A stretch of DNA of 64,000 nt from Mytilus trossulus (Eukaryota), in the NCBI RefSeq assembly GCF_036588685.1, contig NC_086386.1:9672001-9736000 (forward strand). The letters run 5' to 3'. The notes under the pieces were generated by a model, which worked only from the letters and a program-made list of their open reading frames with translations, was not told where the DNA came from and ran no database searches. The translations under genes and the position numbers were made by a program. This document shows positions 3,001 through 63,100 of this stretch, piece after piece. Positions within the stretch are counted from its first letter, which is position 1, and each line of letters begins with the position of its first letter.

Positions 3001-6000
3001 CTCAACCCTCCCCCTAAACCTCTAACCAATGTAGAAAGGTAAACGCATAACAATACGCACATTAAAATGGAGTCTTTGTCAGAAGATGTAACCAAAGAAA
3101 ATATACAAAATGACAATAATACATAAATAATAACAGACTACTAGCAGTTAACTGACATGCCAGCTCCAGACTTCAATTAAACTGACTGAAAGATTATGAT
3201 TTCATCATATGAACATCAGGCACAATCCTTCCTGTTAGGGGTTTAGTATCATACCATCATTACATATATGAGAAGAACATAACCCGTGTCATGCCAACAA
3301 CTGTTTTTAGAATAAATGTGTTTAGTTCCGATGCAAATAAAATTGAGAATGGAAATGGGGAATGTGTCAAAGAGACAACAACCCGACCAAAATAAAAAAA
3401 CACAACAGCAGAAGGTCACCAACAGGTCTTCAATGTAGCGAGAAATTCCCGCACCCGGAGGCGTCCTTCAGCTGGCCCCTAAACAAATATATACTAGTTC
3501 AGTGATAATGAACGCCATACTAATTTCCAAATTGTACACAAGAAACTAAAATTTAAATAATACAAGACTAACAAAGGCCAGAGGCTCCTGACTTGGGACA
3601 GGCGCAAAAATGCGGCGGGGTTAAACATGTTTGTGAGATCTCAACCCTCCCCCTATACCTCTAACCAGTGTAGAAAAGTAAAAGCATAACAATACCTTAT
3701 CAGGGACTCAATATTAACACCAAAATATGCAATCTTTAATGACTTGACACCGTTATCGTAATTATATCCCTTCTTAATAAGTCTTTTCAAAGGTTTTGTT
3801 AGTTTCTGAGGTGAATACTGACACCTTTGTGCTTTATAAAGAATATTTCCATAAAAAATTGGATGTGAAATACCTGAACGTATAAGAAGTCTGCATGTTG
3901 AGCTATATTTACGAATGATGTCCTTATACTGATGATAAAATTTGGTAAATGTTTTGACTAGTTGGTCCGAGAACACAATTAATTTGTAGTGCATTTCTTT
4001 TAGAACATAAATGAAAATTTAAAAAATCCCACCTGCGCTTTCTCAATGAAATTTTTACAGTGTGTTGTACTACTTTTGGGACAAATTATATCAAAATTAT
4101 AGAAAACTTCATCGCCTCTAACTCAAAATATTTACAATTTTGTGTTTAGGGTGTCTTGAAATCTTTTGACAGCTTCCGAAGTGCTAATTTTTAACCTTTT
4201 TCAGCTGGACCAAATCACTACTTTCTTGTAAAATTCTTGACCTAAATTTTTTTACAGTGTAATTTCACCCCCCTTCTAACAATTTGAGGCATTAAACATG
4301 GAGAAATAAATTTGGAAGGGGTATAAACATTATTGGCAAGTAACCCACTGTTAACACTAGGGACTATATTCGTGAACAACGAAAATCAAGGGACGACAAT
4401 TGTGGTCTCGGACCAGTTTGTGATATTGAAAACCCTGGTGTAATAATTTTTCAGTCATACATAAATTTCTCTCGTTAAAATCTTAAACATTGTTACATAC
4501 ACAAGCGAATCGTACAAGTTATAATATATAAACACCGTAATATGGTGATAAGGGAACGTCACCATCTAAAAATGGATAATTATCGATAGGAAATGAAAAA
4601 TCATCCCTTTTATCATAAATTTTAGTATTCAGCTTTCCGTTAGTGATATAGATATCAAGATCGAGGAAAGGGCAGTGGTCATTGTTAGTATTAGCTTTAT
4701 TTAAAGTAAGTTCAACAGGATAAATTTTATTAATATACATACTGAAGTCGTCATTATTAAGAGCCAAAATATCATCCAAATATCTAAAAGTATTATTAAA
4801 TTTGTTTATTATGAAAGTATGTTCCCATTAAATTAAATTAAGAAACAAAAATTCTGTGAGTATTGCATAGCAATACATAGTCTCCTACCGATTAAAAATT
4901 CATTGTAATGGAAAGAAATTCTAAATTGATCAATATGTAACTTGTCATGGCGTACAAAAAATAGTGTTTACTACAAACAAGAGTGCACACACTGAAATGT
5001 CTCGCCTTCTATACTAATCCTTGATACTATCTTTGATAAACCTAAAGCTTTATTACAACTGTCACATAAACTCAACATTAACCAAGAAAATGAAACATTG
5101 ATCAATGAACCATGAAAATCAGGTCAAGGTCAGATAAACCATGCCAGGCAGACATGTACAGCTAACAATTCTTTAATACAACAAATATTATTGCTTATAA
5201 ATAAAGAAAAACAGACCAAAACACAAACACTTAAAACTTAGCAATAGACCGTGAAAATGAGGTCAAGGTCAAATAAAACCTGCGTAACCGACATAAAGAT
5301 CATAAAATATTTCCATACACCACATATAGTTGACCTAATGCATAAAGTATTAGAAAAATAGACCAAAACTAAAAAACTTAACTTTGACCACTGAACCATG
5401 AAAATGAGGTCAAGGTCAGATGACACCTGTCAGCTAGACATGTACACCTTACAATCATTCCATACACCAATTATAGAAGACCTATTGCATATAGTATAAG
5501 AAAAACAGACCAAAACACAAAAACTTAACTATAACCACTGAACCATGAAAATGAGGTCAATGTCAGATGACACCTGCCAGTTGGACATGTACACCTTACA
5601 GTCCTTCCATACACCAAATATACTAGACCTATTGCTTATAGTATCTGAGATATGGACTTGACCACGAAAACTTAACCTTGTTCACTGATCCCTGAAATGA
5701 GGTCGAGGTCAAGTGAAAACTGTCTGACAGGCTTGAGGACCTTGCAAGGTACGCACATACCAAATATAGTTATCCAATTACTTATAATAAGAGAGAATTT
5801 AACATTACAAAAAATCTTAACTTTTTTTTCAAGTAGTCACTGAACCATGAAAATGAGGTCAAGGACATTGGACATGTGACTGATGGAAAGTTCGTAACAT
5901 GAGGCATCTATATACAAAGTATGAAGCATCCAGGTCTTCTACCTTCTAAAATATAAAGCTTTTTAACGAAACACTAATGCGTTTGTTGGGTGACTTTATT

Positions 6001-25300: not shown

Positions 25301-28300
25301 ATGAAATATCCACCATCCACGAAAATTGGTACCCAATAATAAATGAATCCTCCATAGGTTTAAATTGTCAACATTATGTTGCCTGTCCATGTTGAAATGA
25401 TCAAAGAGCTGAAATTGATAGAACTTTTTCTATTATGAAAAAAATGACTTCTTTATATTGATCTTTTGAATCAATAAGACAGGTTCATATGACAGCCTCT
25501 TTTACATAAGAATTCTACAGAAAAATCAATTAAGTGCAAGTACCTTAAAATTAACTTCTTAATTTAAACGATATTGTGGAATTTCCTATCGTGCAACACA
25601 TTCTAAAATATAATTTTTTATCAACACCTTCATTGGATGTTTAATTATAATGTAAAACATGTTGACCCCATGTTTTGTTGGAAACAGAACACAAATTTGT
25701 TTACAAAGGGAAAGAAGAGTGTCATTTTAGAAATTCATATAAAAATAAAGTATTTACATATATGCAAAAGACGTTCAAAAATGCATCACATGGACATTTT
25801 AGTTTCTGGTTAATATTTTTGATTTCATGTCAGTATAAAATGTTGTAAGGATTGAAAACATGGGAAAGATATATTGTTTTTTTATATTTGTATTTAGCTG
25901 AGAGAATGGCATTTCACACAGATTCTAATGTTGATTTCCTTATTGTGCTAAAATAACAGGAAGTCATAAGACATATTCCTCAATATATTGGGAAAACATA
26001 TCAAACTTTATACGTTTATACACAATGTAGATCAATGAATGAATTATTTATGTCACTGTTTAACGAATCCCCTTTATGATGTTGCTGTATTATTCAAGGA
26101 TACATTGAAGATTTTTATTTGATTTTCTATACATTTTGGTAATTGTAAGGCATTAACATTGCTCTTGGTTTTACATGTACATGTTCAAGGTTAGTATCAC
26201 TTTCCAGGACAAAAGGGGTTTTTTTTTTTTTAGGGGGGGGGGGGGGTATTTTTTCTGCTCTGTTACATTTAAAAGAAATAATGATCAGGATTTTGATACT
26301 TTGTAATGTTTGGTTAGGGTAAATTTATAGTCATCAGATTTTCATTTTGTCAGTTTGAACTAAGTAAAGGAGTTACTTGTTGACAAGTAGACAGCAAATC
26401 AACAGCTCTTTCATTTGCTCTATCAGCAATGTGTTAATTGTATATTATCATATAGCCTTAGTTGAACATAAATCTTCATGGCTTTATTTTTCTGCCTCTG
26501 ACTTTACTCAGTATCTCCATATTTGAGTAACTTGTAACAAATTGTTCACATATATCTACATGTATATGTAAGGTCCTCTGAACTTTACAAAGGAAATAAT
26601 TAAGACAAAAAAGTACTGTCTGGTATTGAGTTATTTGTCAAAAATATTTTTGGGGAGATGGTCATTTTGTTTTCTTCTAAATTAAAGAAGAAATCAGTAT
26701 ATGTACATTTGGTATTTAATGTCCTACTTTTTATACTGATTTTAAAGCCTTACATGTTCTGTTATTTTGTAATTAAATTTAAAATACATAAGGACAATGT
26801 TTTACATGATTTTATATTTCTTGCTTGTACATGGCAGATTTTTGGGAATGTAGTTTTTTGTAAACAAACTTTCATATTGAAAAAAAAAAGACGTCTATAT
26901 AAACTACAAGTATAATATGCTTATTAAGTTACTGTTATTATTTTACAATGTTAAATTTTGATAAATTTACTCTGACCAAGGATTTGTATAGTAAGTCTTA
27001 CTATACAAATCCTTGCTCTGACAAATGATTTGTTTACTTTAAGACAGACGAGATCATGTCTGTTCTGAGATCAGCATTCCAGTGTGCGTATGAACAGACT
27101 CATAAACAGATCTGTATAATGTGTCCATTACACCAGCTACATAAGTTGTGTCAGGAACTGAACGGTAAGTTACAATACAAAGCAAATAAATAGACTCGCA
27201 GTCTGTGTTTGGATCTAAATGGTTATTGTGAATACAAAACTAGCAGCTAACTTCAGTCTGTGTCAGGAAAGTATATGTGTCAACATGGTCAAAATAAGAA
27301 CAAATACAAAACAGGCAACACAAAACAAAGGCTCTGTAAAAAGACTCCAAAAAACATAGGCTATGTTTTAAAAAACTTCAATCAGACAACACAAAAAAAG
27401 GCTATGTCAAAGCTCTTAGCAGGAAACACACAAATCAGACTATGTCAAAAATTCCAAGCATTCACTGTAAACAAGATGCATTTTTAATTCTTAATGACAT
27501 CTTGTTCATTTGATTACCATTTTTTATTATTCTCTGTGTTAGAAAGCTCAGGAAAAAGAAGTGCCTTCAAATTAGAAATTTATAAATACGCAGGCTACAA
27601 GGCTGTACAAAGCAAAGTCTTAAAGATTTATGTCCTATGTTTGTAGGATTATCTAGTCACAATGCATATGACCTCTTAGAGAAAAGACTTCACAATCTAC
27701 AGGAGAAAGATGTCGCTGATGTCCATAACCTTGTACAGGTACGGCTTAATTATAAATATTTAAAGTTATTTGGGATCTTCACGGGGGATGTAGGCTCATA
27801 TTCCCCTTCATTGTTTATATCTGTAGTTTCAGAATTCTAAACTTTTGCTGCACATGTAATTGTAGTTTGAGAATTTTAAACATTACTACACATGTCATTA
27901 TAGATTGAGAATTTAAAGAATTTACTGCACATGCAATTGTAGTTCCAGAATTTTAAACTTACTTTTTCACATGCAATTGTTTCAGAATTAAATGTTTTAA
28001 TGCACATGTAACTGTTGTTTGCATATTTTTAAATTTAACTACACATTTAATTCAAGATTTTACTACATGTGTAGTTTTATTTTGAAAATTTTAAGATTTT
28101 ACAAGTGGTTTTAGTTTTAGAATTTTAAACTTTTACTCAACATTTAATTTTAGTATGAAAAATTCTAAACATGTAATTGTGTGTTGAGAATTTAAACATT
28201 TACTACACATGTTATTGTAGATTGAGATAACTAAGTTTTACTACACCATGTACACATGTATTTGTAGTTTGAGAATTATAACTTTTACTGCACATGTAAT

Positions 28301-49900: not shown

Positions 49901-50139
49901 ATAGATTTAAAAATACAACTATAAAAATCCTTGGTTATTCATGTATGTAAATACTTTTTTTATTTCACAGAAGAAGAAGAAAATGGTAGAGTTTGTTGAT
50001 TTTTTTAAAATAAAAGATAGTTCTTTTTCTGTTCATTTACTGGATAATATATAGTTCTCTAAACTATCAAGGACTTATTGAAATATTTCAATTTTGTGGG
50101 AAACAAAAAGCAAAAGTCCTAAAAGTAAAAACACATATG

Positions 50140-53267: not shown

Positions 53268-56024
53268 GTGAAGACACCGTGTGAGATAAAACTATCAAAT
53301 CAAAGAGATGGAAAACTAAATCAGTTAAGGATCAACTGGAATAAGATAGACAAAAAAGGATATGAAGAAGAAGATGAATCTAGATTAGCACTCATAGATG
53401 ACAATGAACTCATACTGACATGTGACAATATATCAGATAATATCAATTCCATTTGTAAGATACTGTCAGAATCAGCAGTAAAGAATAGTAGTGTTCCTAT
53501 AAATAGAAGGAAAAGAACAGGAAAACCAAGCAAAAAACCATGGGCGCCAGAAATTGCTAGTGCGGCGGCTAAGTCAAGCAAGATACACCATGCAAAATGG
53601 AAAGCTGCGGGCAAACCAACAAATCCAGAAAACGAGATTTATAAAAACAATAAGAACTCTAAGAAAAAACTAAGATCACTCCAAAGGAGGCTTGAAGCGA
53701 CAAATAGAAACAACAAATACCAGGAACTAATGGAACTGAACGAAAGGAACGACAAAGGGTTTTACAAACTGGTGAGGAAACAACGTGACCCGTCGAACCC
53801 CTCAGGATCATCTTTGATATTTAAAGATAATCTTTTGAATGACCAAATTGAAATTACAGAGGCATTCGCTCAATACTTTGAAGAATTCTCAACACCATGT
53901 GAAAATGTGAACTTTGACAATGATCACTTTACAAATGTAAAGCGAGACATCACAAGTCTCAATGAACTATTTAAACATTCAAAAAACCATAACATACCAG
54001 TAACTACAACGGAAGAGGTAAAGAAAACTGTGCTATCGTTCAAAAATGGAAAATCCCCAGATGAAGAAAACATCACCGCTGAACATGTTAAGTTTGGAGG
54101 ACAAACACTCATTTATATCTTGACAAATATCATCAACTTCATCTTTCAAAATCTTGATATCCCATCTTTACTAAAGAGTGGAATAGCCTGTCCAATATTG
54201 AAAAAGAATAAAGGAAAAAAGAAAACGGATCCAAACTCCTACAGAAAAATTGTCATCACTATGTTCATTGGAAAAATTGTTGAGAAGCTACATCTTCAAA
54301 ACAACCAAGATTCAATAAACAAACAACAAAGTAGACTTCAGAAAGGATTTACCAAAGGACAAATGCCTGCAATTGCTGCCTTAATATTCACAGAGCTTAT
54401 AACAGAGGCAAACAAGTCAAACTCAAGCCTGTATATAGCACTTATGGATGCCAAGAAGGCGTTTGATATCCTTTGGCACTTGGGTCTACTTAGAGAAATG
54501 TATAACTTTGGACTACATGGGGACAACTGGCTATTCTTCAAAAACTGGTACGAGGAAGTTACATCAAAAATAAAATGGAATGGAAACATCTCAAGACCTA
54601 CCCAAGAACAACAAGGAGTGAGACAGGGAGTCGTATGGTCACCCACTGCTTACAAATTTTTTATCAATAAACTGTTAAAGACATTTGAGAAAATACAATT
54701 GGGGGCATATATTGGATGTACCTACTGCGGCATCCCAACTGTGGCCGACGATGTCACCTTCATATCGAAGAGCCCCACTGAGCTCCAAACAATGTTAGAC
54801 GTACAAGCATATTATGCGAACAAACAGAGATATTTACTAAGTGAACAAAAGTCGACGATTCTAGTACTCAACGACAAAGAAAATAGATCATGGTCACTAA
54901 ACAACAAAGACTTATCAACTTCTGAATCAGCTATGCATCTAGGAATTGAAAGGGACTCTACATCGAAATCAGGCTCAAAAGAGGTGATATGCAAGCGAGT
55001 GATTACAGCTAGAAAGACCACTTACTCTCTAATGGGTGCAGGGCTCCACGGGCTAAACGGTGTAAATCCACATGTTTCAGCACACCTTATTCAGATTTAT
55101 GTGATACCCAGATTGCTGTATGGCTTAGATGTAATAAACATTTCAAGAAATGACATGGAGAAACTAGAGGTGTACCATAGGAAACTCGTGAAACAAATTC
55201 AACACCTTCCAATAAGATCAGCCAACTCAGCATCTCTCTTTCTACTAGGACGAATTCCTATCATAGGTGAAATTCACAAGAAAATCCTTAAAACATTCGG
55301 GAATATCATCAGGAACGACGAATCAGTGGAAAAAGATATTGCGATCCGTCAGCTTGCCATGAAATCAATCTGGTTTCTAAAAGTAGCCGAAATTGCGGAT
55401 CAATATAACTTACCTTCTCCGCATGATCTCATTGACAACCCACCAATAAAAGAAACTTGGAACAAGCTGGTCAATCAAACAATTAGCAGTCATTTCATTT
55501 TAACTCTACAACAAGAAGCAGAGAATAAATCTACTTTAAAATATTTGAACTTAAGTGTTACAGTACCAGAAAAACCACACAACATCTGGACAAGCTGTGG
55601 TAATGAACCGTTTGCAATAATTATGGCACACTTAAAAGCCAAAATTGCAGTGGGAACAATCGTACTGCAAAGTTCAAAAGCAAAACATTCAAAGTCAGAA
55701 GTGTCACCAATTTGTCAGTTATGTCATATTGAGACGGAGGATATGATTCACTTTTTGATTAAATGCACAGTGCTGAAAACAACTAGATCACCATTTTTGC
55801 AGGAGTTAAAAACCTTTGTCAAAACATGCTTGAGAGGAGAGAATGATGAGACATTATTCCATGAATTGTTCAATAACAACGAGTATTTAGCTAGATTGAT
55901 CATTGACTGTTCGTTTTTCCACTTTCTCAAAAATACAGAGAAAACTCGGATAGAAACAATCTCAAGAGGCTTATGCTACAAACTATACCAAAAGCGAGCA
56001 ACTATATTGGCCGAAAATTCGTAA
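53268..56024 (+). CDS. LINE ORF2 reverse transcriptase (N-terminally truncated, likely non-functional copy)
   Basis: RT motifs KSPDEENITAEH, NSYRKI, QKGF, DAKKAFD, QGVRQG..WSP, VADD, HLGI; C-terminal CQLC-x7-H-x4-C. Confidence 0.9.
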   Translation: MKTPCEIKLSNQRDGKLNQLRINWNKIDKKGYEEEDESRLALIDDNELILTCDNISDNINSICKILSESAVKNSSVPINRRKRTGKPSKKPWAPEIASAAAKSSKIHHAKWKAAGKPTNPENEIYKNNKNSKKKLRSLQRRLEATNRNNKYQELMELNERNDKGFYKLVRKQRDPSNPSGSSLIFKDNLLNDQIEITEAFAQYFEEFSTPCENVNFDNDHFTNVKRDITSLNELFKHSKNHNIPVTTTEEVKKTVLSFKNGKSPDEENITAEHVKFGGQTLIYILTNIINFIFQNLDIPSLLKSGIACPILKKNKGKKKTDPNSYRKIVITMFIGKIVEKLHLQNNQDSINKQQSRLQKGFTKGQMPAIAALIFTELITEANKSNSSLYIALMDAKKAFDILWHLGLLREMYNFGLHGDNWLFFKNWYEEVTSKIKWNGNISRPTQEQQGVRQGVVWSPTAYKFFINKLLKTFEKIQLGAYIGCTYCGIPTVADDVTFISKSPTELQTMLDVQAYYANKQRYLLSEQKSTILVLNDKENRSWSLNNKDLSTSESAMHLGIERDSTSKSGSKEVICKRVITARKTTYSLMGAGLHGLNGVNPHVSAHLIQIYVIPRLLYGLDVINISRNDMEKLEVYHRKLVKQIQHLPIRSANSASLFLLGRIPIIGEIHKKILKTFGNIIRNDESVEKDIAIRQLAMKSIWFLKVAEIADQYNLPSPHDLIDNPPIKETWNKLVNQTISSHFILTLQQEAENKSTLKYLNLSVTVPEKPHNIWTSCGNEPFAIIMAHLKAKIAVGTIVLQSSKAKHSKSEVSPICQLCHIETEDMIHFLIKCTVLKTTRSPFLQELKTFVKTCLRGENDETLFHELFNNNEYLARLIIDCSFFHFLKNTEKTRIETISRGLCYKLYQKRATILAENS

Positions 56025-56250
56025 TTACCACAGATTATGGGCAGGAGCTATTGTGAATGACTTAAAAGATGTAACAGTAGTGACAGATATTCCTTGAATC
56101 AATGTAAATAACAAGCGATTATAGGGATCCTTCTTAACCTAATGACTTAATGTAAATACCGTGTGATAAGATTTACATGATTTGTGTGTATATATATAAC
56201 TATTCCGTAATATGTGAGTGTTTTATTATGATGTCTTTAGTCTTTAGTAA

Positions 56251-56599
56251 GTGTCCCCAAGGATTTGTATAGTTATAACTATACAAATCCTTGGGGACAC
56301 TTACTAAAGACTAAAGACGTCCAAGGATTTGTATAGTTATAACTATACAAATCCTTGGGGACACTTACTAAAGACTAAAGACGTTTTATTATGATGTCTT
56401 TAGTCTTTAGTAAGTGTCCCCAAGGATTTGTATAGTTATAACTATACAAATCCTTGGGGACACTTACTAAGGACTAAAGACATCATAATAAAACACTCAC
56501 ATATTACGGAATAGTTATATATATACACACAAATGTAAATCTTATCACACGGTATCATTAGGTTAAGAAGGATCTAACTATACAAATCCTTGGTGTCCC
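56251..56599. mobile_element. 335-bp templated fold-back insertion with P-like termini and 7-bp TSD in the LINE 3' region
   Basis: GTGTCCC|CAAGGATTTGTATAGT ... ACTATACAAATCCTTG|GTGTCCC. It contains three 36-bp palindromes (56258, 56322, 56421) plus inverted and direct copies of the left flank. Confidence 0.75.
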
Positions 56600-56899
56600 A
56601 AAATGACACTGTAAACACTTGTGTACGTTTCCTCTTTTGTAGTTTCTTCACATATGTAATGATCACTCATGTAGTAATTGAAATGGTGGCTGCTGCTTAA
56701 AAAAATTTGACTTAATTTTGATTTAGAATTATAGTGTTTTTACTGTATAGTGTTTTTGAATCTACCAGATTGGGATTTTAAAAGTCTACGCCGTTTCACA
56801 AGGACGGTGGTTCTCCTACAAAAGGAGGGAGATACAAAAGAAGAAGAACAAGTGGTAATGTTCACATATGAAGTGGTAATAATTGTTGATTGACATTCT

Positions 56900-57160
56900 C
56901 CGGGTCTCCAATTGAGCGAGTTACAGATGTAAATTATATTCGATTACAGAAATGATGAATGGGAAGTTTTACACTCCTTACCTAGGAGTCTAGTCCCGTA
57001 TTTGGAAGAAGAAGAATGACGGAAACTCATATCTAGTCCGTCTCCTGTTTTAGTATTACAATTTCATTGACCAATCAGAGCTTGTGCGCCATCTCTCAAA
57101 TCACCCAAAACAAGAAAACAAAAACAATGTTGCCTTGTTGAAAAAGACAACTGAAGAATA
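56900..57160 (+). promoter_or_regulatory. Putative CKAP2-like promoter with NF-Y CCAAT box
   Basis: TTGACCAATCAGAG at about 57067-57080 and an ETS-like CGGAAA near 57019, immediately upstream of the ATG at 57161. CCAAT boxes are typical of G2/M genes. Confidence 0.45.
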
Positions 57161-60100
57161 ATGTCTGCAGTATCGAGTAAAAAAGGTATAATAGAGTAAA
57201 ACTTGAAAAATTACTGGTTGCACTCTCTTTAGTTCATTTCCTTATTGATCTTTCAAAAGCACAGGAGCTCTATTGATAGTCGACTTTACAGAATTTTATT
57301 GATAGAACTTCCGATTCCTGTGTCCAAAGTGACTTCAGACTGTGCAGACTATAACTGTGTTTGGCCAAATAATTATAACATCTGGCAATACTATTTTAGT
57401 TTTATCCTGGGACGAAGGCATCCCAGAAAAACATGAAAATAACCCGGTCTTTTATGCCTTTGTCCCAGGAAAAAAAAGTATTAAGATAGCCTTACCAGAT
57501 GTCATAATTATTTGGACTTTTAACTGTATGACTTTGTGCATCCTAATGCATCACATGCACTTGCGTCTATCCATGGGAAGACCCACTATCAACGTGGGTA
57601 GGGGTGTGGGTAAACATACATTTTTTTAAGAGGTAGGTAAAGGGTTATTTTTGTGCAACGTGTTTTGCTATTTTTATTTCATGTGCAGCTGTGAAAAAAG
57701 TGCGTTACTCACCATGTTTCGTGAAATTGGTAAAAAGATCTACGTGCAAGATATTTTTAATCATTTGTTCATCCTGAAATGGGAATTTTATTTCGCTTTC
57801 CGTGCAGATACTCCCCAGTACACACTATACTTATGTATAACAATAAATATATCAAACACAATTTATAATTGTCGATCGCCCACAAGACTAGCCGATCGCC
57901 CACAAGACTAGAAGGACATCGGATTTTATTATAATCTATCATAACAAACATATTATTTATGCAAATAATATCTATATACATATACATGTAAATAAACAAT
58001 GCTTTTAATACCAAATGAAAACATTGACGCCGTCATAAACGAACCCGCCGGCCAGGAAAAACCAACAACCAAGTAACCGTAGTCGATATGGAAACCTGTG
58101 TCCAAACCCTAATGCTCGGGAGATCGTCTCGAGAGTTGTACTTGGACAATACTGAAAGTTAGCTTATGATTACATAAACAAAATACCATCAAAATGTGTA
58201 ACAGCAAACAAAAATACCAATATATAATACAAAAAACAAGAAAAATCAAACATTAATGAACCAACATTAAATCTGAACTTGACCAGTTCGAAGTTGGTGA
58301 GAGAATGGTCTGATAGGGAAATAAACCCGTCAAAATGACCATTCACGTAATACTACAATTAATATCACGTGTCCATACATATATTGAAAGAACCATTAGT
58401 ACAATAATTTTCCTCTAACTTCAAAACGCGGAAAATTATAATTACACACTCTTTTAAATGTGGCCTGAAAGATAAAAAATCAAATATATTTTGCTTTTTA
58501 TCAAGTTTGTCAGTGAAAAAACTACATGTATGTGAATTGAGTTTTTTATCCTACATTGAACTGTTGATGTCGTCCCTTAATCATAAACCTTTTCATTTAC
58601 TGCTTGCAGATGCATATTTACAGAAGTTTCAAAAGTATAAAGATGAGAAAGAAAAACAGAAGAAAGATCAAAGGTATTATCACATTCTCTCATCATTTTG
58701 TTCACATTTTTTTTATTTTAAGAACTTAGAAAAAGAAGACTAACATGACTAACATTTGTAACTGATGTAAAAAAAAAACAACTAAAACGTCAAAAACTTT
58801 TAATGAATTGTACAGGTACCAAGGGAAATATTTTTTTTAAAATACAAATATTGCCAGTATTTTAATAAGTTTTGCAGACTAAATCATGTTTTTATTTTAT
58901 GTATTATGTCTACATAGAAATTGTTGGACTCAATGTCAGTCTTTGATACTTAAATGACCTTGTCTTTCTTGGAGAACGTTAATGGTTAAAAACTCCCTTC
59001 CATTCAAACAAGTTTCCGTTTTGAGATTGAATTTCTTCAAATGTATTTACCCGCATATCAGTTGTTATTGGAATTGCTACCTTTAGAATCAAACTGAACA
59101 ATAAAATGACATTTAGTGTAGTTGGATAAATACATGTATATGCCAGTGTCTCAGGTAATATTTAGTGGTTTTTTTTTTTAGATTAAATTAAGCCTTGGAT
59201 TTTAAATGCATTTCTTTCATGAATATGTACATACATGAATACATGTCTTTCTTTTGTACTCTATTTGTAGGTATTTATATAATGAGGAATTAAATACATT
59301 GATATAGTCATCATGGTCATGTACAATGTACATTTGTGTGTACATATGAAATAAGTGACATATAATTTAAAAATGCCCTTTTAAGTCCAAATTTTAAATG
59401 TATGTTTTACAGTTCTATGAATGTTTTATCTTTTAGATCACAATTTTCAAGTAAAGTAGATACTTTTAAGCCACAAAACCCTAGTCAAAAGTCATGGAGT
59501 TCAAAGAAAAAAAGTTTCACAGGAGTAAAACCAACTGAGCATCAATATACAGTCAGTCATCATTGTAAAGAAAATAAAAAACCTTTTATAGAATTAGTGA
59601 CAAACACACAGACACACAAACCACATGGATCTAAGCCTGTTCAAGAAAAGCAGATTTCTAAGCCTGTCCAAGTAAAACAGATATCAAAATCTTCTCCAGT
59701 AATACAGGTATCTAAGACTGTTCCAGTAAACAGAAAGACTGCAGGCTCAGTGACAGAAGCTAGAAAGGTACAGACCTCAACATTTAATGTAAGGAAATCA
59801 TTGGGACATGTTAAAAAAGTGCCAAAGACTGCAGGAAAACCCAGGAAATCCCTTCCGGACACATGTTCAGGAAACCCCAGGAAATCTCTCCAAGGCACAT
59901 CAAATAATAAATTTCACGTTACTCTTACCAAATCAATAGAAGTTGATAATTCAAAACTAAATCAAAATGGAAACTCACGAAAAAGTTTATCAAGTAATGG
60001 CAATGTGCGAAGAAGTGTATCTAATAATGAGAACTCACGAAAAAGTGTATCAAATAAAGATGTGAATTCACGACAAAGTTTCTCTGTAAAATCAAGACGT

Positions 60101-63100
60101 AGCATTTCTTCAGTAAATGTGAATTCACATCGTAGAACTTCTGGTGTAAATAACAACAAAGTGAAATCAAGTGTTCCTAAAAGTAAATTGATTGTGGGTC
60201 AGAGGTCAAGAAGGCATTCAGATATTCATAAAGAACAGAAAAAAACCAAACCAGCAAGTATTCTGAAGAGAAAGTCATGTTTTGCTAGTATAGATATAGA
60301 AGGAGTCTACACGGTTAGTAAAACTCCTGATCATGGTAGAAGTGTGAGATTTATCAGTCCAGATACACAGGTGGACCACAATATAAGTACTTTTAGAAAG
60401 ACACCAAAGAGACCCGTAGATAATGTGATTAGTGACAGACAACCAACACCTAAACACTCACCCAAGAAACCTCGTCATAATGAAGAACAAGTTGTCATGA
60501 GGTATATTGTTATAGTTTAACATATTTATTTGCATCATTACAAATATATCAGCATACAATAATAATAGCATTCGGAAACAAGCTGGTCATAATTTAACCA
60601 GTCTTTAAATGCAGAAACTGATGTTAACCTAATGCTAATATATTTTCTTTCAAAATTAAAGTTCATGTAAGCAATTATTGGTGATATTAGCATGGTAGCA
60701 TGTTACCGTAAACTAATATAATTGTAAAGGTACATTGTAAATAAAATTGAGAATGGAAATGGGGAATGTGTCATAGAGACAACAACCCAACCAAATAAAA
60801 AAAAAACAACAGCACAAGGTCACCAACAGGTCTTCAATGCAGCGAGAAATTCCCGCACCCGGAGGCGTCCTTCAGCTGGCCTCCAAACAAATATACACTA
60901 GTTCAGTGATAATGAACGCCATACTAATTTCCAAATTGTACACAAGAAACTAAAATTAAAATAATACAAGACTAACAAAGGCCAGAGGCTCCTGACTTGG
61001 GACAGGCGCAAAAATGCGGCGGGGTTAAACATGTTTGTGATATCTCAACCCTCCCCCTATACCTCTAACCAATGTAGAAAAGTAAACGCATAACAATACG
61101 CACATTAAAATTCAGTTCAAGAGAAGTCCGAGTCTGATGTCAGAAGATGTAACCAAAGAAAATAAACAAAATGACAATAATACATAAATAACAACAGACT
61201 ACTAGCAGTTAACTGACATGCCAGCTCCAGACTTCAATTAAATTGACTGAAAGATTATGATTTCATCATATGAACATCAGACACAATCCTTCCCGTACCA
61301 TTATTATCATTTAAAAAAAAATTGTTTGTATTGCTTTTTATATATCTTTTTGCAGATCAGTATGTTTAAAAAATCTATACTACTTTTAAAATTGTATAAT
61401 GTGTGAGTGAGCCTTTCATACATGTCCTTGAGGTACAAAATGTACATGTTAGATTGAGGATGGAAATGGGGAATGGGTCAAAAAGCCAACAACCCGACCA
61501 AAGAGCAAATAACAGTCTGAGGCAACTAATGGGCCTTCCATGCAGTGAGAAACTCCTGCACCTGGAGGAGTCCTTCAGATGGCCCCTAAACAAATATTGT
61601 TACTAGTTCAGTAATAATGGACGTATTTATAAAAATCAAAATTATACACAAGAAACTTAAATTAAAAATCATACAAGACTAACAAAGGCCAGAGGCTCCT
61701 GACTTGGGACAGGCGCAAAAATACAGTGGGGTTAAACATGTTTTTGAGATCTTTTAATGTATCTGGTCTTTCATATAACCCCAGGATCTGTCTGAAAGTT
61801 AAAAAAAGGGCCTCATAATTCATTTCTTACTTCTTGGATTGGTATTAAGCTTGGCAGAATCATTTATAAATGTCACGTGTAGTTTTTATGCATTAGATTA
61901 CTGTGCTTTTTTTATTGTTTTATATCTGCTATGTTCAAAGGGTAAACCGATTTGATTGTTGATATATATATTTTAATTCATGCTTTAGTTAGTTTTAACT
62001 TTTTTCCCTTTTTAAAATTGCAATTCTGTTTTTCAGAAACAAACTTGATGAATGGTTGAAGTCTAAAGGAAAAACCCCTTCCAAGTTCCGACACCTGATG
62101 TGTTTCCATGACGACAACAATAAATCAGATTCTGTTACTGATTCCTGTATAAAAAGGAGTCTAACTGTTGAGGAGCTTACAGAACAGGTATACAGGCTCA
62201 TTCCAAGATTCATTTCTTTCAGTTATGTTTAAACAATTTGAAATTTAATGCTTATGAAAACACATATTTAATAAACATATATAACATTATGAAATATTTT
62301 AGTTACTAGGTCAAATCAAAATCAAATACAGTTTTTTTTTAAACACCCAAAAATCTAATATATAGTAAAAATATTATTGAAAATGTTGAATAATTCCCTC
62401 TATCTTTCTGCACGTATTTAATCCAACTATATCCATGATATCAAAAGTATGATATTTTAATATCAAACCATTTTGTTTTAGAAAGCGACAATTGATCGTG
62501 AAGATAATATAGCAGTTAACTTAGCGGACCAGTTTAGGGATGCTGCATTAGAAGAATTAGATTCCATGTTAGAGGAATGTACAACATTGTTTGAGGCTGT
62601 AAGTTTATTGGAGGGTATTTTCCCTATGTAATCATGGTCATATTGTTTTGAGGATTCCATATGTTTATGTTGGAGGCTTAATGCTTGTCTCAGTAGATGG
62701 GTTAATTTTCTAAAAAAAATAATTACGGAAGTTCCTTCATTTATTTCAAATTTTCAAAGACCTGTTTTGATTACTGGTAATATTCTCTTTCTTTAGATAC
62801 AACATAACATGACAGTCATTGTTTTAAATCTAAGTTATCCTTTTTTAAGATAAAAGAATTTTACACACCTTGTAAAACACATACTTTTTTTTTTATTATT
62901 ATAAGTTTCAAAATAGCAAGGTTAAAACTAAATTTTGGAAGAGTATAAAAAAAGTAGTATTTTCATTTTGATTTAGACATTAAAAATCTACAGTCTATTT
63001 ATAATACTATCAAACATGTCAGAATAGCTCCTTCATCTAAGGGTTAATTTGAATCCCACTTAAATGCTATCTTTTAATCTTTTACTAATTTTTCCAGTTA

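What the first reader, a model, noticed from the sequence alone, without database searches (positions are those of the whole stretch)
56251..56599. Insertion built from iterative snap-back copies of its own flank, bounded by transposon-like ends and a 7-bp TSD
Seen: a 335-bp insert (56258-56592) lies between two copies of GTGTCCC. It consists almost entirely of three parts: (a) a perfect 36-bp palindrome CAAGGATTTGTATAGTTA-TAACTATACAAATCCTTG, three times plus a final right half; (b) inverted copies of the left flank (25 bp twice, then about 120 bp reaching back to 56126); (c) one direct 38-bp copy of the flank. The long inverted copy lacks an 11-nt and a 3-nt segment and has one substitution. 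Known: Drosophila P transposase cuts with a 17-nt stagger, leaving about 16-17 nt of each TIR on the donor ends. P-superfamily TSDs are 7-8 bp, and such breaks are often repaired with flank-templated filler by polymerase theta. Inference: the left 3' overhang folded back at its TA-rich tip, copied itself and the flank, unwound and re-primed three times, then joined the right overhang. This would be a readable record of repair after excision of a P-like element in a mollusc. It sits in a LINE with an almost intact ORF, so it should be recent.
Basis: partly seen in the sequence, partly recalled or inferred. Interest (0 to 1): 0.8.

Follow-up and report, generated by a model that had tools for sequence, protein, structure and literature searches.

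The report
Fold-back repair scar of P-like transposon
A 335-base scar left where a P-type jumping gene cut itself out, patched with repeated backwards and forwards copies of the neighbouring DNA; it is an unusually long natural example of a repair process already known from fruit-fly experiments.

Summary
332 of the insert's 335 nt are either 18-nt transposon-end remnants (126 nt) or copies of the left flank (206 nt); GTC is unassigned.

The ends belong to a real P-superfamily transposon. A 10,436-bp copy on contig C3 has perfect 35-bp inverted ends, a 7-bp target duplication and open frames with the three P-transposase core domains. No THAP domain was found.

The genome holds 842 short end-to-end scars, against 6 for the control pattern, and only 67 intact 35-bp ends. 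Retention stops sharply at 20 nt per side, which suggests a 20-nt staggered cut rather than Drosophila's 17.

Five of five paralogs of the host repeat carry the empty site.

- The host is a 200-bp fragment of another repeat inside a LINE 3' UTR, not the LINE itself.
- The "3-nt deletion" is a later insertion in the flank, so the scar has some age.

Public reads did not span the structure. First readers of this scan noted simple scars of this type elsewhere in this genome. The Pol-theta-type iterative fold-back mechanism is inferred, not shown.

The parts
56251..56257 (+). Left copy of the 7-bp target-site duplication GTGTCCC
   Evidence: Paralogs of the host repeat have a single GTGTCC(C) here.
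56258..56293 (.). Palindrome 1: 18 nt of the left transposon end joined to 18 nt of the right end
   Evidence: One search shows a perfect palindrome. The same 36-mer occurs at 10 other single sites in the genome. All 18 nt match the 35-bp inverted end of the C3 element.
56294..56318 (-). Inverted copy of flank 56233-56257 (25 nt, perfect)
   Evidence: One search scores 12 of 12 inverted flank bases after the palindrome.
56319..56321 (.). GTC, the only 3 nt with no assigned template
56322..56357 (.). Palindrome 2, identical to palindrome 1
   Evidence: It lies within the second unit of the perfect 64-nt tandem duplication 56257-56320 / 56321-56384.
56358..56382 (-). Second 25-nt inverted copy of flank 56233-56257
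56383..56420 (+). Direct copy of flank 56220-56257 (38 of 38)
56421..56456 (.). Palindrome 3, identical to palindrome 1
56457..56574 (-). Long inverted copy of flank 56126-56257 (118 nt). It has one substitution, lacks 11 nt (derived in the copy), and lacks 3 nt that the flank gained later.
   Evidence: All 5 LINE paralogs lack the 3 nt and all 5 have the 11 nt. The copy shares locus-specific letters with the flank.
56575..56592 (-). 18-nt remnant of the right transposon end
56593..56599 (+). Right copy of the 7-bp target-site duplication GTGTCCC
56126..56250 (+). Left flank that served as template for the filler. It runs on through the left target duplication to 56257; 56235-56257 belongs to the host repeat and 56126-56234 is LINE 3' UTR.
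56600..56769 (+). Rest of the host repeat fragment. Together with 56235-56257 and one GTGTCCC it makes about 200 bp of the 5' part of a repeat with at least 40 copies. The whole block 56235-56769 is absent from the LINE paralogs.
53268..56024 (+). 918-aa reverse-transcriptase open frame of the LINE whose 3' UTR holds the host repeat fragment
   Evidence: Pfam RVT_1 at 7.4e-24.
26970..27022 (.). Independent simple scar of the same family: a 39-bp palindrome (26977-27015) between two copies of CTCTGAC

Best explanation
A member of a P-superfamily DNA transposon family inserted at GTGTCCC, making a 7-bp target duplication. The family has 35-bp inverted ends beginning CAAGGATTTGTATAGTTAGAAGG. The site lies in a repeat fragment within a LINE 3' UTR.

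The element later excised by the long staggered cut typical of P transposases, leaving single-stranded remnants of its ends on both donor ends. The break was not sealed as the usual 28-43-bp scar. Instead, the left end, carrying an 18+18-nt end junction, folded back on itself or on an identical end. It was extended along its own flank, released and re-primed several times, giving 25 nt, 25 nt, 38 nt and finally 132 nt of flank copy. It was then joined to the 18-nt remnant on the right end.

This is what synthesis-dependent, polymerase-theta-type end joining produces in Drosophila, but here the filler is about 300 nt long.

Shown: the anatomy, the transposon family and its P-type transposase, the 7-bp duplication, the empty site in paralogs, the local origin of the filler, and later mutation.

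Inferred: the staggered cut, its length, the order and number of synthesis rounds, the enzyme, and the claim that all of it happened during one repair event.
For: **Anatomy.** 332 of 335 nt are end remnants or left-flank copies, and none comes from the right flank.

**Family.**
- The 16-nt motif occurs 5,328 times against 59 for the control.
- There are 842 end-to-end scars against 6 for the control.
- Perfect 7-bp duplications flank 14 of the 18 scars surveyed outside this locus, one of the 14 being a duplicate locus. A further 2 match at 6 of 7, and 2 match poorly.

**Autonomous-looking element.**
- C3:78369771-78380206 is 10,436 bp, with perfect 35-bp inverted ends and the 7-bp duplication ACCACAT.
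- It carries TNP-like RNaseH_N at 9.9e-23, and GBD at 4.5e-8 and RNaseH_C at 3.1e-6.
- The only PDB hit is Drosophila P transposase 6p5a, E = 8.2e-4.
- The 1.36-kb right end lies beside the same transposase gene on C1, C3, C5, C12 and C13.

**Long stagger.**
- 52 sites retain at least 20+20 nt, and 33 of the 50 listed are exactly 20+20 with no filler.
- No site retains at least 23+23 nt.

**Insertion history.**
- Empty site: 5 of 5 host-repeat paralogs read ...AGTAAGTGTCC(C)AAATGACAC without an insert.
- Local template: the long inverted copy shares locus-specific letters with the flank and crosses the boundary between the host repeat and the LINE.

**Real and inherited.** The inverted copy keeps the ancestral state where the flank has since gained 3 nt (5 of 5 paralogs).

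**Known precedent (passages read).**
Against: - No independent read or contig spans the insert. The best run held 0.52 of the sampled words, and the contigs laid came from paralogs.
- The palindrome centres have no spacer. A fold-back of a bare overhang on itself cannot give that, so a pre-formed 18+18 junction or a template in trans is needed.
- Each flank copy that was checked stops with no letter shared with what follows it, whereas classic snap-back models expect priming microhomology.
- The perfect 64-nt tandem duplication could be a separate, later slippage event.
- None of the 18 other scars sampled shows an inverted flank, so this is a rare outcome and not a demonstrated class.
- No THAP domain was found.
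- The transposase gene model is unresolved and spans at least 2 exons.
Confidence: 0.75

Rival explanations
1. Two-step origin. Excision first left an ordinary 36-bp perfect palindrome scar. Later, that palindrome formed hairpins during replication and provoked strand-switching and slippage. These built the inverted flank copies and the 64-nt tandem duplication over one or more generations.
For: - The same 36-bp palindrome exists as a plain scar at 10 other sites.
- A pre-existing 18-bp stem explains the spacer-less palindrome centres.
- The perfect 64-nt tandem duplication looks like slippage.
- The region folds extremely strongly as a single strand, z = -36.7.
Against: - Of the 18 other scars sampled, many of them perfect or near-perfect palindromes, none has expanded in this way.
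- The 33 sites listed as exact 40-bp palindromes were matched by a pattern that allows no expansion, so they do not bear on this.
- The final junction joins flank copy directly to a second right-end remnant (56574|56575). That is easier to explain at an open break.
Confidence: 0.15
2. Assembly or read artefact: a chimeric fold-back read was built into the contig.
For: No independent spanning sequence was obtained. Palindromes are hard to sequence and assemble.
Against: - The break points fall exactly at nt 18 of a genuine transposon end, the same junction as at 10 other loci, between a true 7-bp duplication.
- The copies differ from their template in ways that track evolutionary history. The inverted copy holds the ancestral 3-nt state that 5 of 5 paralogs share.
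- Read-level fold-backs are single turns at kilobase scale, not nested pieces of 25-132 nt (my own knowledge, not tested here).
Confidence: 0.05
3. Aberrant transposition rather than repair synthesis. Ends from sister chromatids were used together (hybrid-end or sister-chromatid transposition), inverting and duplicating the flank. Later excisions then left the three scars.
For: Each of palindromes 1 and 3 sits between the flank and its mirror image, as if an element lay at the centre of an inverted duplication. P elements are known to do this in Drosophila (recalled, not read here).
Against: - It would need three separate excisions, all leaving the identical 18+18 junction.
- The duplicated pieces are tiny and nested (25, 25, 38 and 132 nt).
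- No new target duplications are present at the internal junctions.
Confidence: 0.03
4. The 335-bp block is itself a small non-autonomous transposon that inserted here.
For: It has inverted 18-nt ends and a 7-bp duplication.
Against: - Its interior is a copy of this locus's own left flank, including the target duplication and locus-specific letters.
- A genome search with the flank found the flank-derived pieces only at this locus; the other matches were LINE copies.
Confidence: 0.02

Closest known systems
Drosophila P-element excision footprints (17-nt 3' overhangs; end remnants joined between the target duplication)
   Same: End remnants of about 16-20 nt from both inverted repeats are joined head to head between intact target duplications. 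The transposase has the P-specific RNaseH_N, GTP-binding insertion and RNaseH_C domains. Passages were read in PMC2895639 and PMC7776569.
   Different: - The target duplication is 7 bp, not 8.
- The inverted ends are 35 bp, not 31 (the 31 is recalled).
- The retention ceiling is 20 nt rather than 17.
- No THAP domain was detected.
- The element is 10.4 kb.
- These are scars fixed in a wild genome, 842 of them, not products recovered in a laboratory.
Synthesis-dependent microhomology-mediated end joining (SD-MMEJ, snap-back type) and pol theta 'T-nucleotide' insertions
   Same: The filler is copied from sequence next to the break, in both reverse-complement and direct orientation, in several rounds and with occasional errors (PMC2943611 and PMC2895639).
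   Different: - The filler is about 300 nt. The fly paper reports average insert lengths of 3.8-13.3 nt for its genotypes (passage).
- The fold-back centres have no loop.
- Each flank copy checked stops with no shared letter at its far junction.
- The enzyme is not known here.
Zebrafish Pdre / THAP9 P-like elements
   Same: P-superfamily elements outside insects with an active transposase homolog (PMC10983969, passages read).
   Different: No sequence comparison was made here. The passages read there describe no natural excision scars.

Membership tests
P superfamily of DNA transposons | Transposase with a P-type split RNase H fold (TNP-like RNaseH_N and RNaseH_C) | tested here: met
   The element with the same ends has PF21787 at 9.9e-23 (81.4 bits, cut-off 24.6) and PF21789 at 3.1e-6 (27.5 bits, cut-off 24). 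The only PDB hit is 6p5a, P transposase.
P superfamily of DNA transposons | GTP-binding insertion domain within the catalytic domain | tested here: met
   PF21788 TNP-like_GBD at 4.5e-8 (34 bits, cut-off 24.8) in the downstream open frame. GTP dependence itself cannot be tested here.
P superfamily of DNA transposons | N-terminal THAP zinc-finger DNA-binding domain | tested here: inconclusive
   There was no THAP hit in the 741-aa frame (E up to 0.01), nor in four 5' frames and one further downstream frame (E up to 0.1). The exon structure is unknown and PF05485 was not searched on its own.
P superfamily of DNA transposons | Terminal inverted repeats and a 7-8-bp target-site duplication | tested here: met
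   Perfect 35-bp ends and the 7-bp duplication ACCACAT on the C3 element. Perfect 7-bp duplications flank 14 of the 18 scars surveyed outside this locus, one a duplicate locus, and GTGTCCC flanks this one. The range of 7-8 bp for the superfamily is recalled; 8 bp for Drosophila comes from PMC7776569.
P superfamily of DNA transposons | Unusually long staggered cleavage that leaves end remnants on the donor DNA | tested here: met
   This is indirect, from scars: 842 sites keep at least 16+16 nt, 52 keep at least 20+20 with 33 of the 50 listed exactly 20+20, and none keeps at least 23+23. Cleavage itself was not assayed.
SD-MMEJ / polymerase-theta templated repair | Inserted sequence has a template close to the break, in direct or inverted orientation | tested here: met
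   206 nt of filler copy the 132 nt immediately left of the break, in three inverted pieces and one direct piece.
SD-MMEJ / polymerase-theta templated repair | Short primer or microhomology repeats at each template switch | tested here: inconclusive
   None of the three inverted flank copies checked runs on past its right junction, and the direct copy does not run on to its left. GT is shared at two junctions. The palindrome centres have no spacer.
SD-MMEJ / polymerase-theta templated repair | Dependence on DNA polymerase theta | not testable with these tools
   This needs genetics or biochemistry in the host. No search for a POLQ gene was made.

The most novel reading that the evidence does not exclude
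This genome is a natural archive of germline double-strand-break repair. More than 800 fixed scars of one P-like family show that its transposase cuts with a 20-nt stagger, where Drosophila P cuts with 17. This locus shows that the repair machinery can run at least four rounds of fold-back synthesis, totalling about 300 nt, at a single break. That is far beyond what laboratory assays have recorded. A bolder version holds that perfect-palindrome scars are themselves unstable seeds that grow into larger palindromes.
Probability: 0.4. Interest if true: 0.6.

Novelty: new member of a known kind. Interest (0 to 1): 0.5.

Why it matters
P-type excision scars and templated, fold-back filler are textbook results from engineered Drosophila assays.

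The scar census gives a biochemical prediction that can be tested: a 20-nt stagger. It also gives a ready-made spectrum of natural end-joining outcomes.

The 335-bp locus is an extreme, fully readable case of iterative templated repair. It is also a caution for annotation, because it mimics a small inverted-repeat transposon.

Tried and rejected
**Searches that led nowhere or gave little**
- Pfam PF12017 (Tnp_P_element, 73 positions) found nothing in the genome and nothing in the controls either, so it says nothing.
- The top 15 PF21787 loci (about 3.4 kb each) held no end motif at up to 3 mismatches, because the element is 10.4 kb long. The ends were found only after walking out from the C1 and C3 copies.
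- The C1 copy is interrupted by two other repeats and lacks a left end within 7 kb.
- LINE paralogs could not give an empty site, because the site is not LINE sequence. Host-repeat paralogs did.
- Reads: all runs offered were Logan contigs, and the best held 0.52 of the words. In the four runs laid, no listed piece spans the insert. The joints seen are the LINE paralog join (56221/56224 to 56770), host-repeat empty sites (56257 to 56601) and another scar elsewhere (56337 to 56571). 157 pieces were not shown. This result is inconclusive, not negative.
- I tried to derive a unique order of synthesis steps from junction microhomology. None of the readings (top strand from the left end, bottom strand from the right end, or one long second-level fold-back) fits all the junctions. 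I therefore give the parse but not a unique path.
- I could not search the genome for other multi-palindrome scars. In the two lists I read (100 motif places, 50 scars) I saw only two other close pairs. One was a duplicated locus (L018/L020). The other was two unrelated scars 300 bp apart (L065).

**Literature**
- Four searches listed no paper on P-type scars in molluscs or on genome-wide natural P scars. That is no proof of absence.
- Supplementary Figure S4 of PMC2943611, on complex insertions, could not be seen.

**Not done**
- No protein database search, structure prediction or Atlas search was run, because Pfam and PDB had already answered the question.

Full report
**Observation**

GTGTCCC stands at 56251-56257 and at 56593-56599. 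The 335 nt between them consist of:
- three identical perfect 36-bp palindromes (56258-56293, 56322-56357, 56421-56456) and a final right half (56575-56592);
- two perfect 25-nt reverse-complement copies of flank 56233-56257 (56294-56318 and 56358-56382);
- one perfect 38-nt direct copy of flank 56220-56257 (56383-56420);
- one 118-nt reverse-complement copy of flank 56126-56257 (56457-56574), with one substitution and gaps of 3 nt and 11 nt.

Only GTC (56319-56321) has no template. No piece comes from the right flank.

Two further points:
- 56257-56320 and 56321-56384 form a perfect 64-nt tandem duplication.
- As a single strand, 56120-56600 folds into one long hairpin at -211.5 kcal/mol, z = -36.7, with none of 100 shuffles folding as well.

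The 16-nt end motif occurs 11 times in the window at up to 2 mismatches, against a mean of 0.20 in the shuffles.

**The ends are those of a real transposon family**

In the 1.30-Gb assembly the motif, at up to 1 mismatch, occurs 2,662 + 2,666 times. The reversed control occurs 28 + 31 times. Many occurrences are facing pairs 17-27 nt apart.

A script over all loci fetched by then and the window found 18 such short scars outside this locus:
- 14 are flanked by perfect 7-bp direct repeats, including L020, which duplicates the L018 locus;
- 2 have 6 of 7 matching;
- 2 (L009, L022) have poor matches.

None of the 18 is followed by the mirror image of its left flank. Palindromes 1 and 3 of the studied locus score 12 of 12 for that.

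A second scar lies in the window at 26977-27015 between two copies of CTCTGAC.

**The family is P-type**

Pfam PF21787 (TNP-like RNaseH_N) has 41 matches in the genome.

One group of copies has a 772-aa open frame and is 99.5% identical between copies. Next to them lies a 1.36-kb segment that ends in the motif. This holds on C1, C3, C5, C12 and C13, and further copies lie on C2 and C7.

The clean C3 copy runs from C3:78369771 to 78380206. It is 10,436 bp long, has perfect 35-bp inverted ends, and is flanked by the 7-bp duplication ACCACAT.

Its domain evidence:
- The long frame carries RNaseH_N at 9.9e-23.
- A downstream frame carries the GTP-binding insertion domain at 4.5e-8 and RNaseH_C at 3.1e-6. 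Both are above Pfam's cut-offs.
- The only solved structure matched is Drosophila P transposase 6p5a, E = 8.2e-4.
- No THAP domain was found in the long frame, nor in four 5' frames and one further downstream frame. The exon structure is unresolved, so this is inconclusive.

The 18 nt kept at the studied locus match the C3 element's end at all 18 positions, including the T at position 17 that separates this subfamily from the A and G variants.

**Census of scars**

| Class | Sites |
|---|---|
| At least 16 nt kept on both sides, 0-12 nt between | 842 (control 6) |
| Intact 35-bp ends at up to 2 mismatches | 67, of which 32 perfect |
| At least 20 nt kept on both sides (T subfamily) | 52 |
| At least 23 nt kept on both sides | 0 |
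| The exact 18+18 palindrome of this locus | 13 places: 10 single sites elsewhere and 3 here |

- The intact ends pair up into elements of 3.6 to about 14 kb. Three of them are 10.4-10.6 kb.
- In the first 50 scars listed on C1, the number of nt between the 16-nt cores is distributed as 1:3, 2:2, 3:13, 4:6, 5:5, 6:1, 7:7, 8:6, 9:3, 10:1, 11:3. I counted this by hand.
- Of the 50 listed sites with at least 20+20, 33 are exactly 20+20 with nothing between, which is a 40-bp perfect palindrome.
- The other 17 mostly carry 1-10 nt of filler. Some of it repeats nearby end sequence.

The ceiling at 20 nt is what a fixed, long staggered cut would give. I infer a stagger of about 20 nt for this family. 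For Drosophila P the figure is 17 nt (passages in PMC2895639, PMC7776569 and PMC10983969).

**Where the site lies**

The 918-aa frame at 53268-56024 is a reverse transcriptase (RVT_1 at 7.4e-24).

Four LINE paralogs and one more distant copy join ...GATGT directly to TGGGATTTT, which corresponds to window 56234 joined to 56770. So 56235-56769 is extra.

Without the 335-bp insert, that extra block is a 200-bp 5' fragment of another repeat. The repeat has at least 40 copies at 88-97% identity.

All 5 paralogs of that repeat that I examined read CTTTAGTCTTTAG(T/C)AAGTGTCC(C)AAATGACAC without interruption. This is the family-level empty site.

**The filler was made from this locus, and the scar has aged**

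An alignment of the flank, its copies and 5 LINE paralogs shows:
- The long inverted copy crosses the boundary between the host repeat and the LINE.
- It shares locus-specific letters with the flank, for example the A at 56141 and the run TTTTATTATGATG.
- All 5 paralogs contain the 11 nt that the copy lacks, so that deletion is derived in the copy.
- All 5 paralogs lack the 3 nt at 56177-56179. The copy therefore keeps the ancestral state, and the flank gained 3 nt after the copy was made, or the template was an allele without them.
- The single substitution is derived in the copy.

This pattern is hard to reconcile with an assembly artefact. It also shows the scar is not brand new.

A genome search with the flank found flank-derived pieces only at this locus. 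The other matches were LINE copies, so the block is not a mobile repeat.

**Independent reads**

The run search offered only Logan contigs, and the best run held 0.52 of the sampled words. I laid four runs on 55700-57200. No listed piece spans the insert, and the joints reflect paralogs. The structure therefore rests on the assembly alone.

**Mechanism**

Shown:
- insertion with a 7-bp duplication;
- loss of the element, leaving 18-nt remnants of both ends;
- filler copied from the adjacent left flank in both orientations.

Inferred: excision by a long staggered cut, and repair by repeated synthesis, release and re-priming. This is the process described for pol theta-dependent end joining after P excision and as snap-back SD-MMEJ.

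Three features need comment:
- The palindrome centres have no loop. A bare overhang cannot have folded on itself. More likely the nascent strand first acquired the right-end 18 nt, which is the same 18+18 junction seen at 10 other sites. It then snapped back on an 18-bp stem, or it used an identical end in trans.
- Each flank copy that was checked stops with no letter shared with what follows it.
- The 64-nt tandem duplication may be a later slippage.

A two-step origin, in which a plain palindromic scar later expanded by replication strand-switching, cannot be excluded. I give it 0.15.

**Comparison and verdict**

This is a P-superfamily excision scar with flank-templated fold-back filler. 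Both phenomena are known.

New here:
- the family itself, with a 7-bp duplication, 35-bp ends, a 20-nt retention ceiling and a 10.4-kb element;
- the number of fixed scars, 842;
- the length and nesting of this one filler, about 300 nt.

First readers of this scan had already noted simple scars of this kind on other pieces of the same genome. None of those notes described a filler like this one.

Noticed in passing
window 26970-27022: A second, simple scar of the same family: a 39-bp palindrome between two copies of CTCTGAC. It belongs to the A-variant subfamily (AGTAAG).
   Followed up: yes
window 49918-49933 and 5008-5023 (minus strand): Lone end-like motifs with 1 and 2 mismatches and no partner end nearby. 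They may be one-sided or decayed scars.
   Followed up: partly
window 56235-56257 plus 56593-56769; L060-L064: A repeat family with at least 40 copies begins (T)CTTTAGTCTTTAGTAAGTGTCCC. Full copies run on past the point where the window's copy stops. Here only its first 200 bp sit inside a LINE 3' UTR, with no clear target duplication. Its type is unknown.
   Followed up: partly
L048 750-787 (C3:78368249-78368286): A 38-bp scar with the duplication GTGTGGC lies 1.5 kb left of the full-length C3 element. It could reflect local hopping.
   Followed up: no
G000:C14:4527603-4533063 (L038 and a hit): A different P-like gene has a 913-aa open frame, and a G-variant 35-bp end lies about 5 kb downstream of it. 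It is on the same contig as the window, about 5 Mb away. It is probably a sister autonomous family.
   Followed up: no
whole genome: There are 41 matches to the P-type RNaseH_N domain in several groups, with open frames of 772, 798, 780 and 1193 aa, some with identical scores. Several P-like families therefore seem recently active.
   Followed up: no
L046 1-2908 and 4612-6408 (C1:17428000-17434407): The C1 copy of the element is interrupted by two other abundant repeats. One has internal tandem repeats of about 500 bp and dozens of copies at 89-98% identity.
   Followed up: no
L049 2129-3367 (minus strand), inside the C3 element: A 413-aa open frame lies on the opposite strand of the element. 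Its only hit is a weak C2H2 zinc-finger match (E = 0.0034, below the cut-off). Its role is unknown.
   Followed up: partly
window 59402-60520: A 372-aa ATG open frame lies downstream of the locus. I did not examine it.
   Followed up: no
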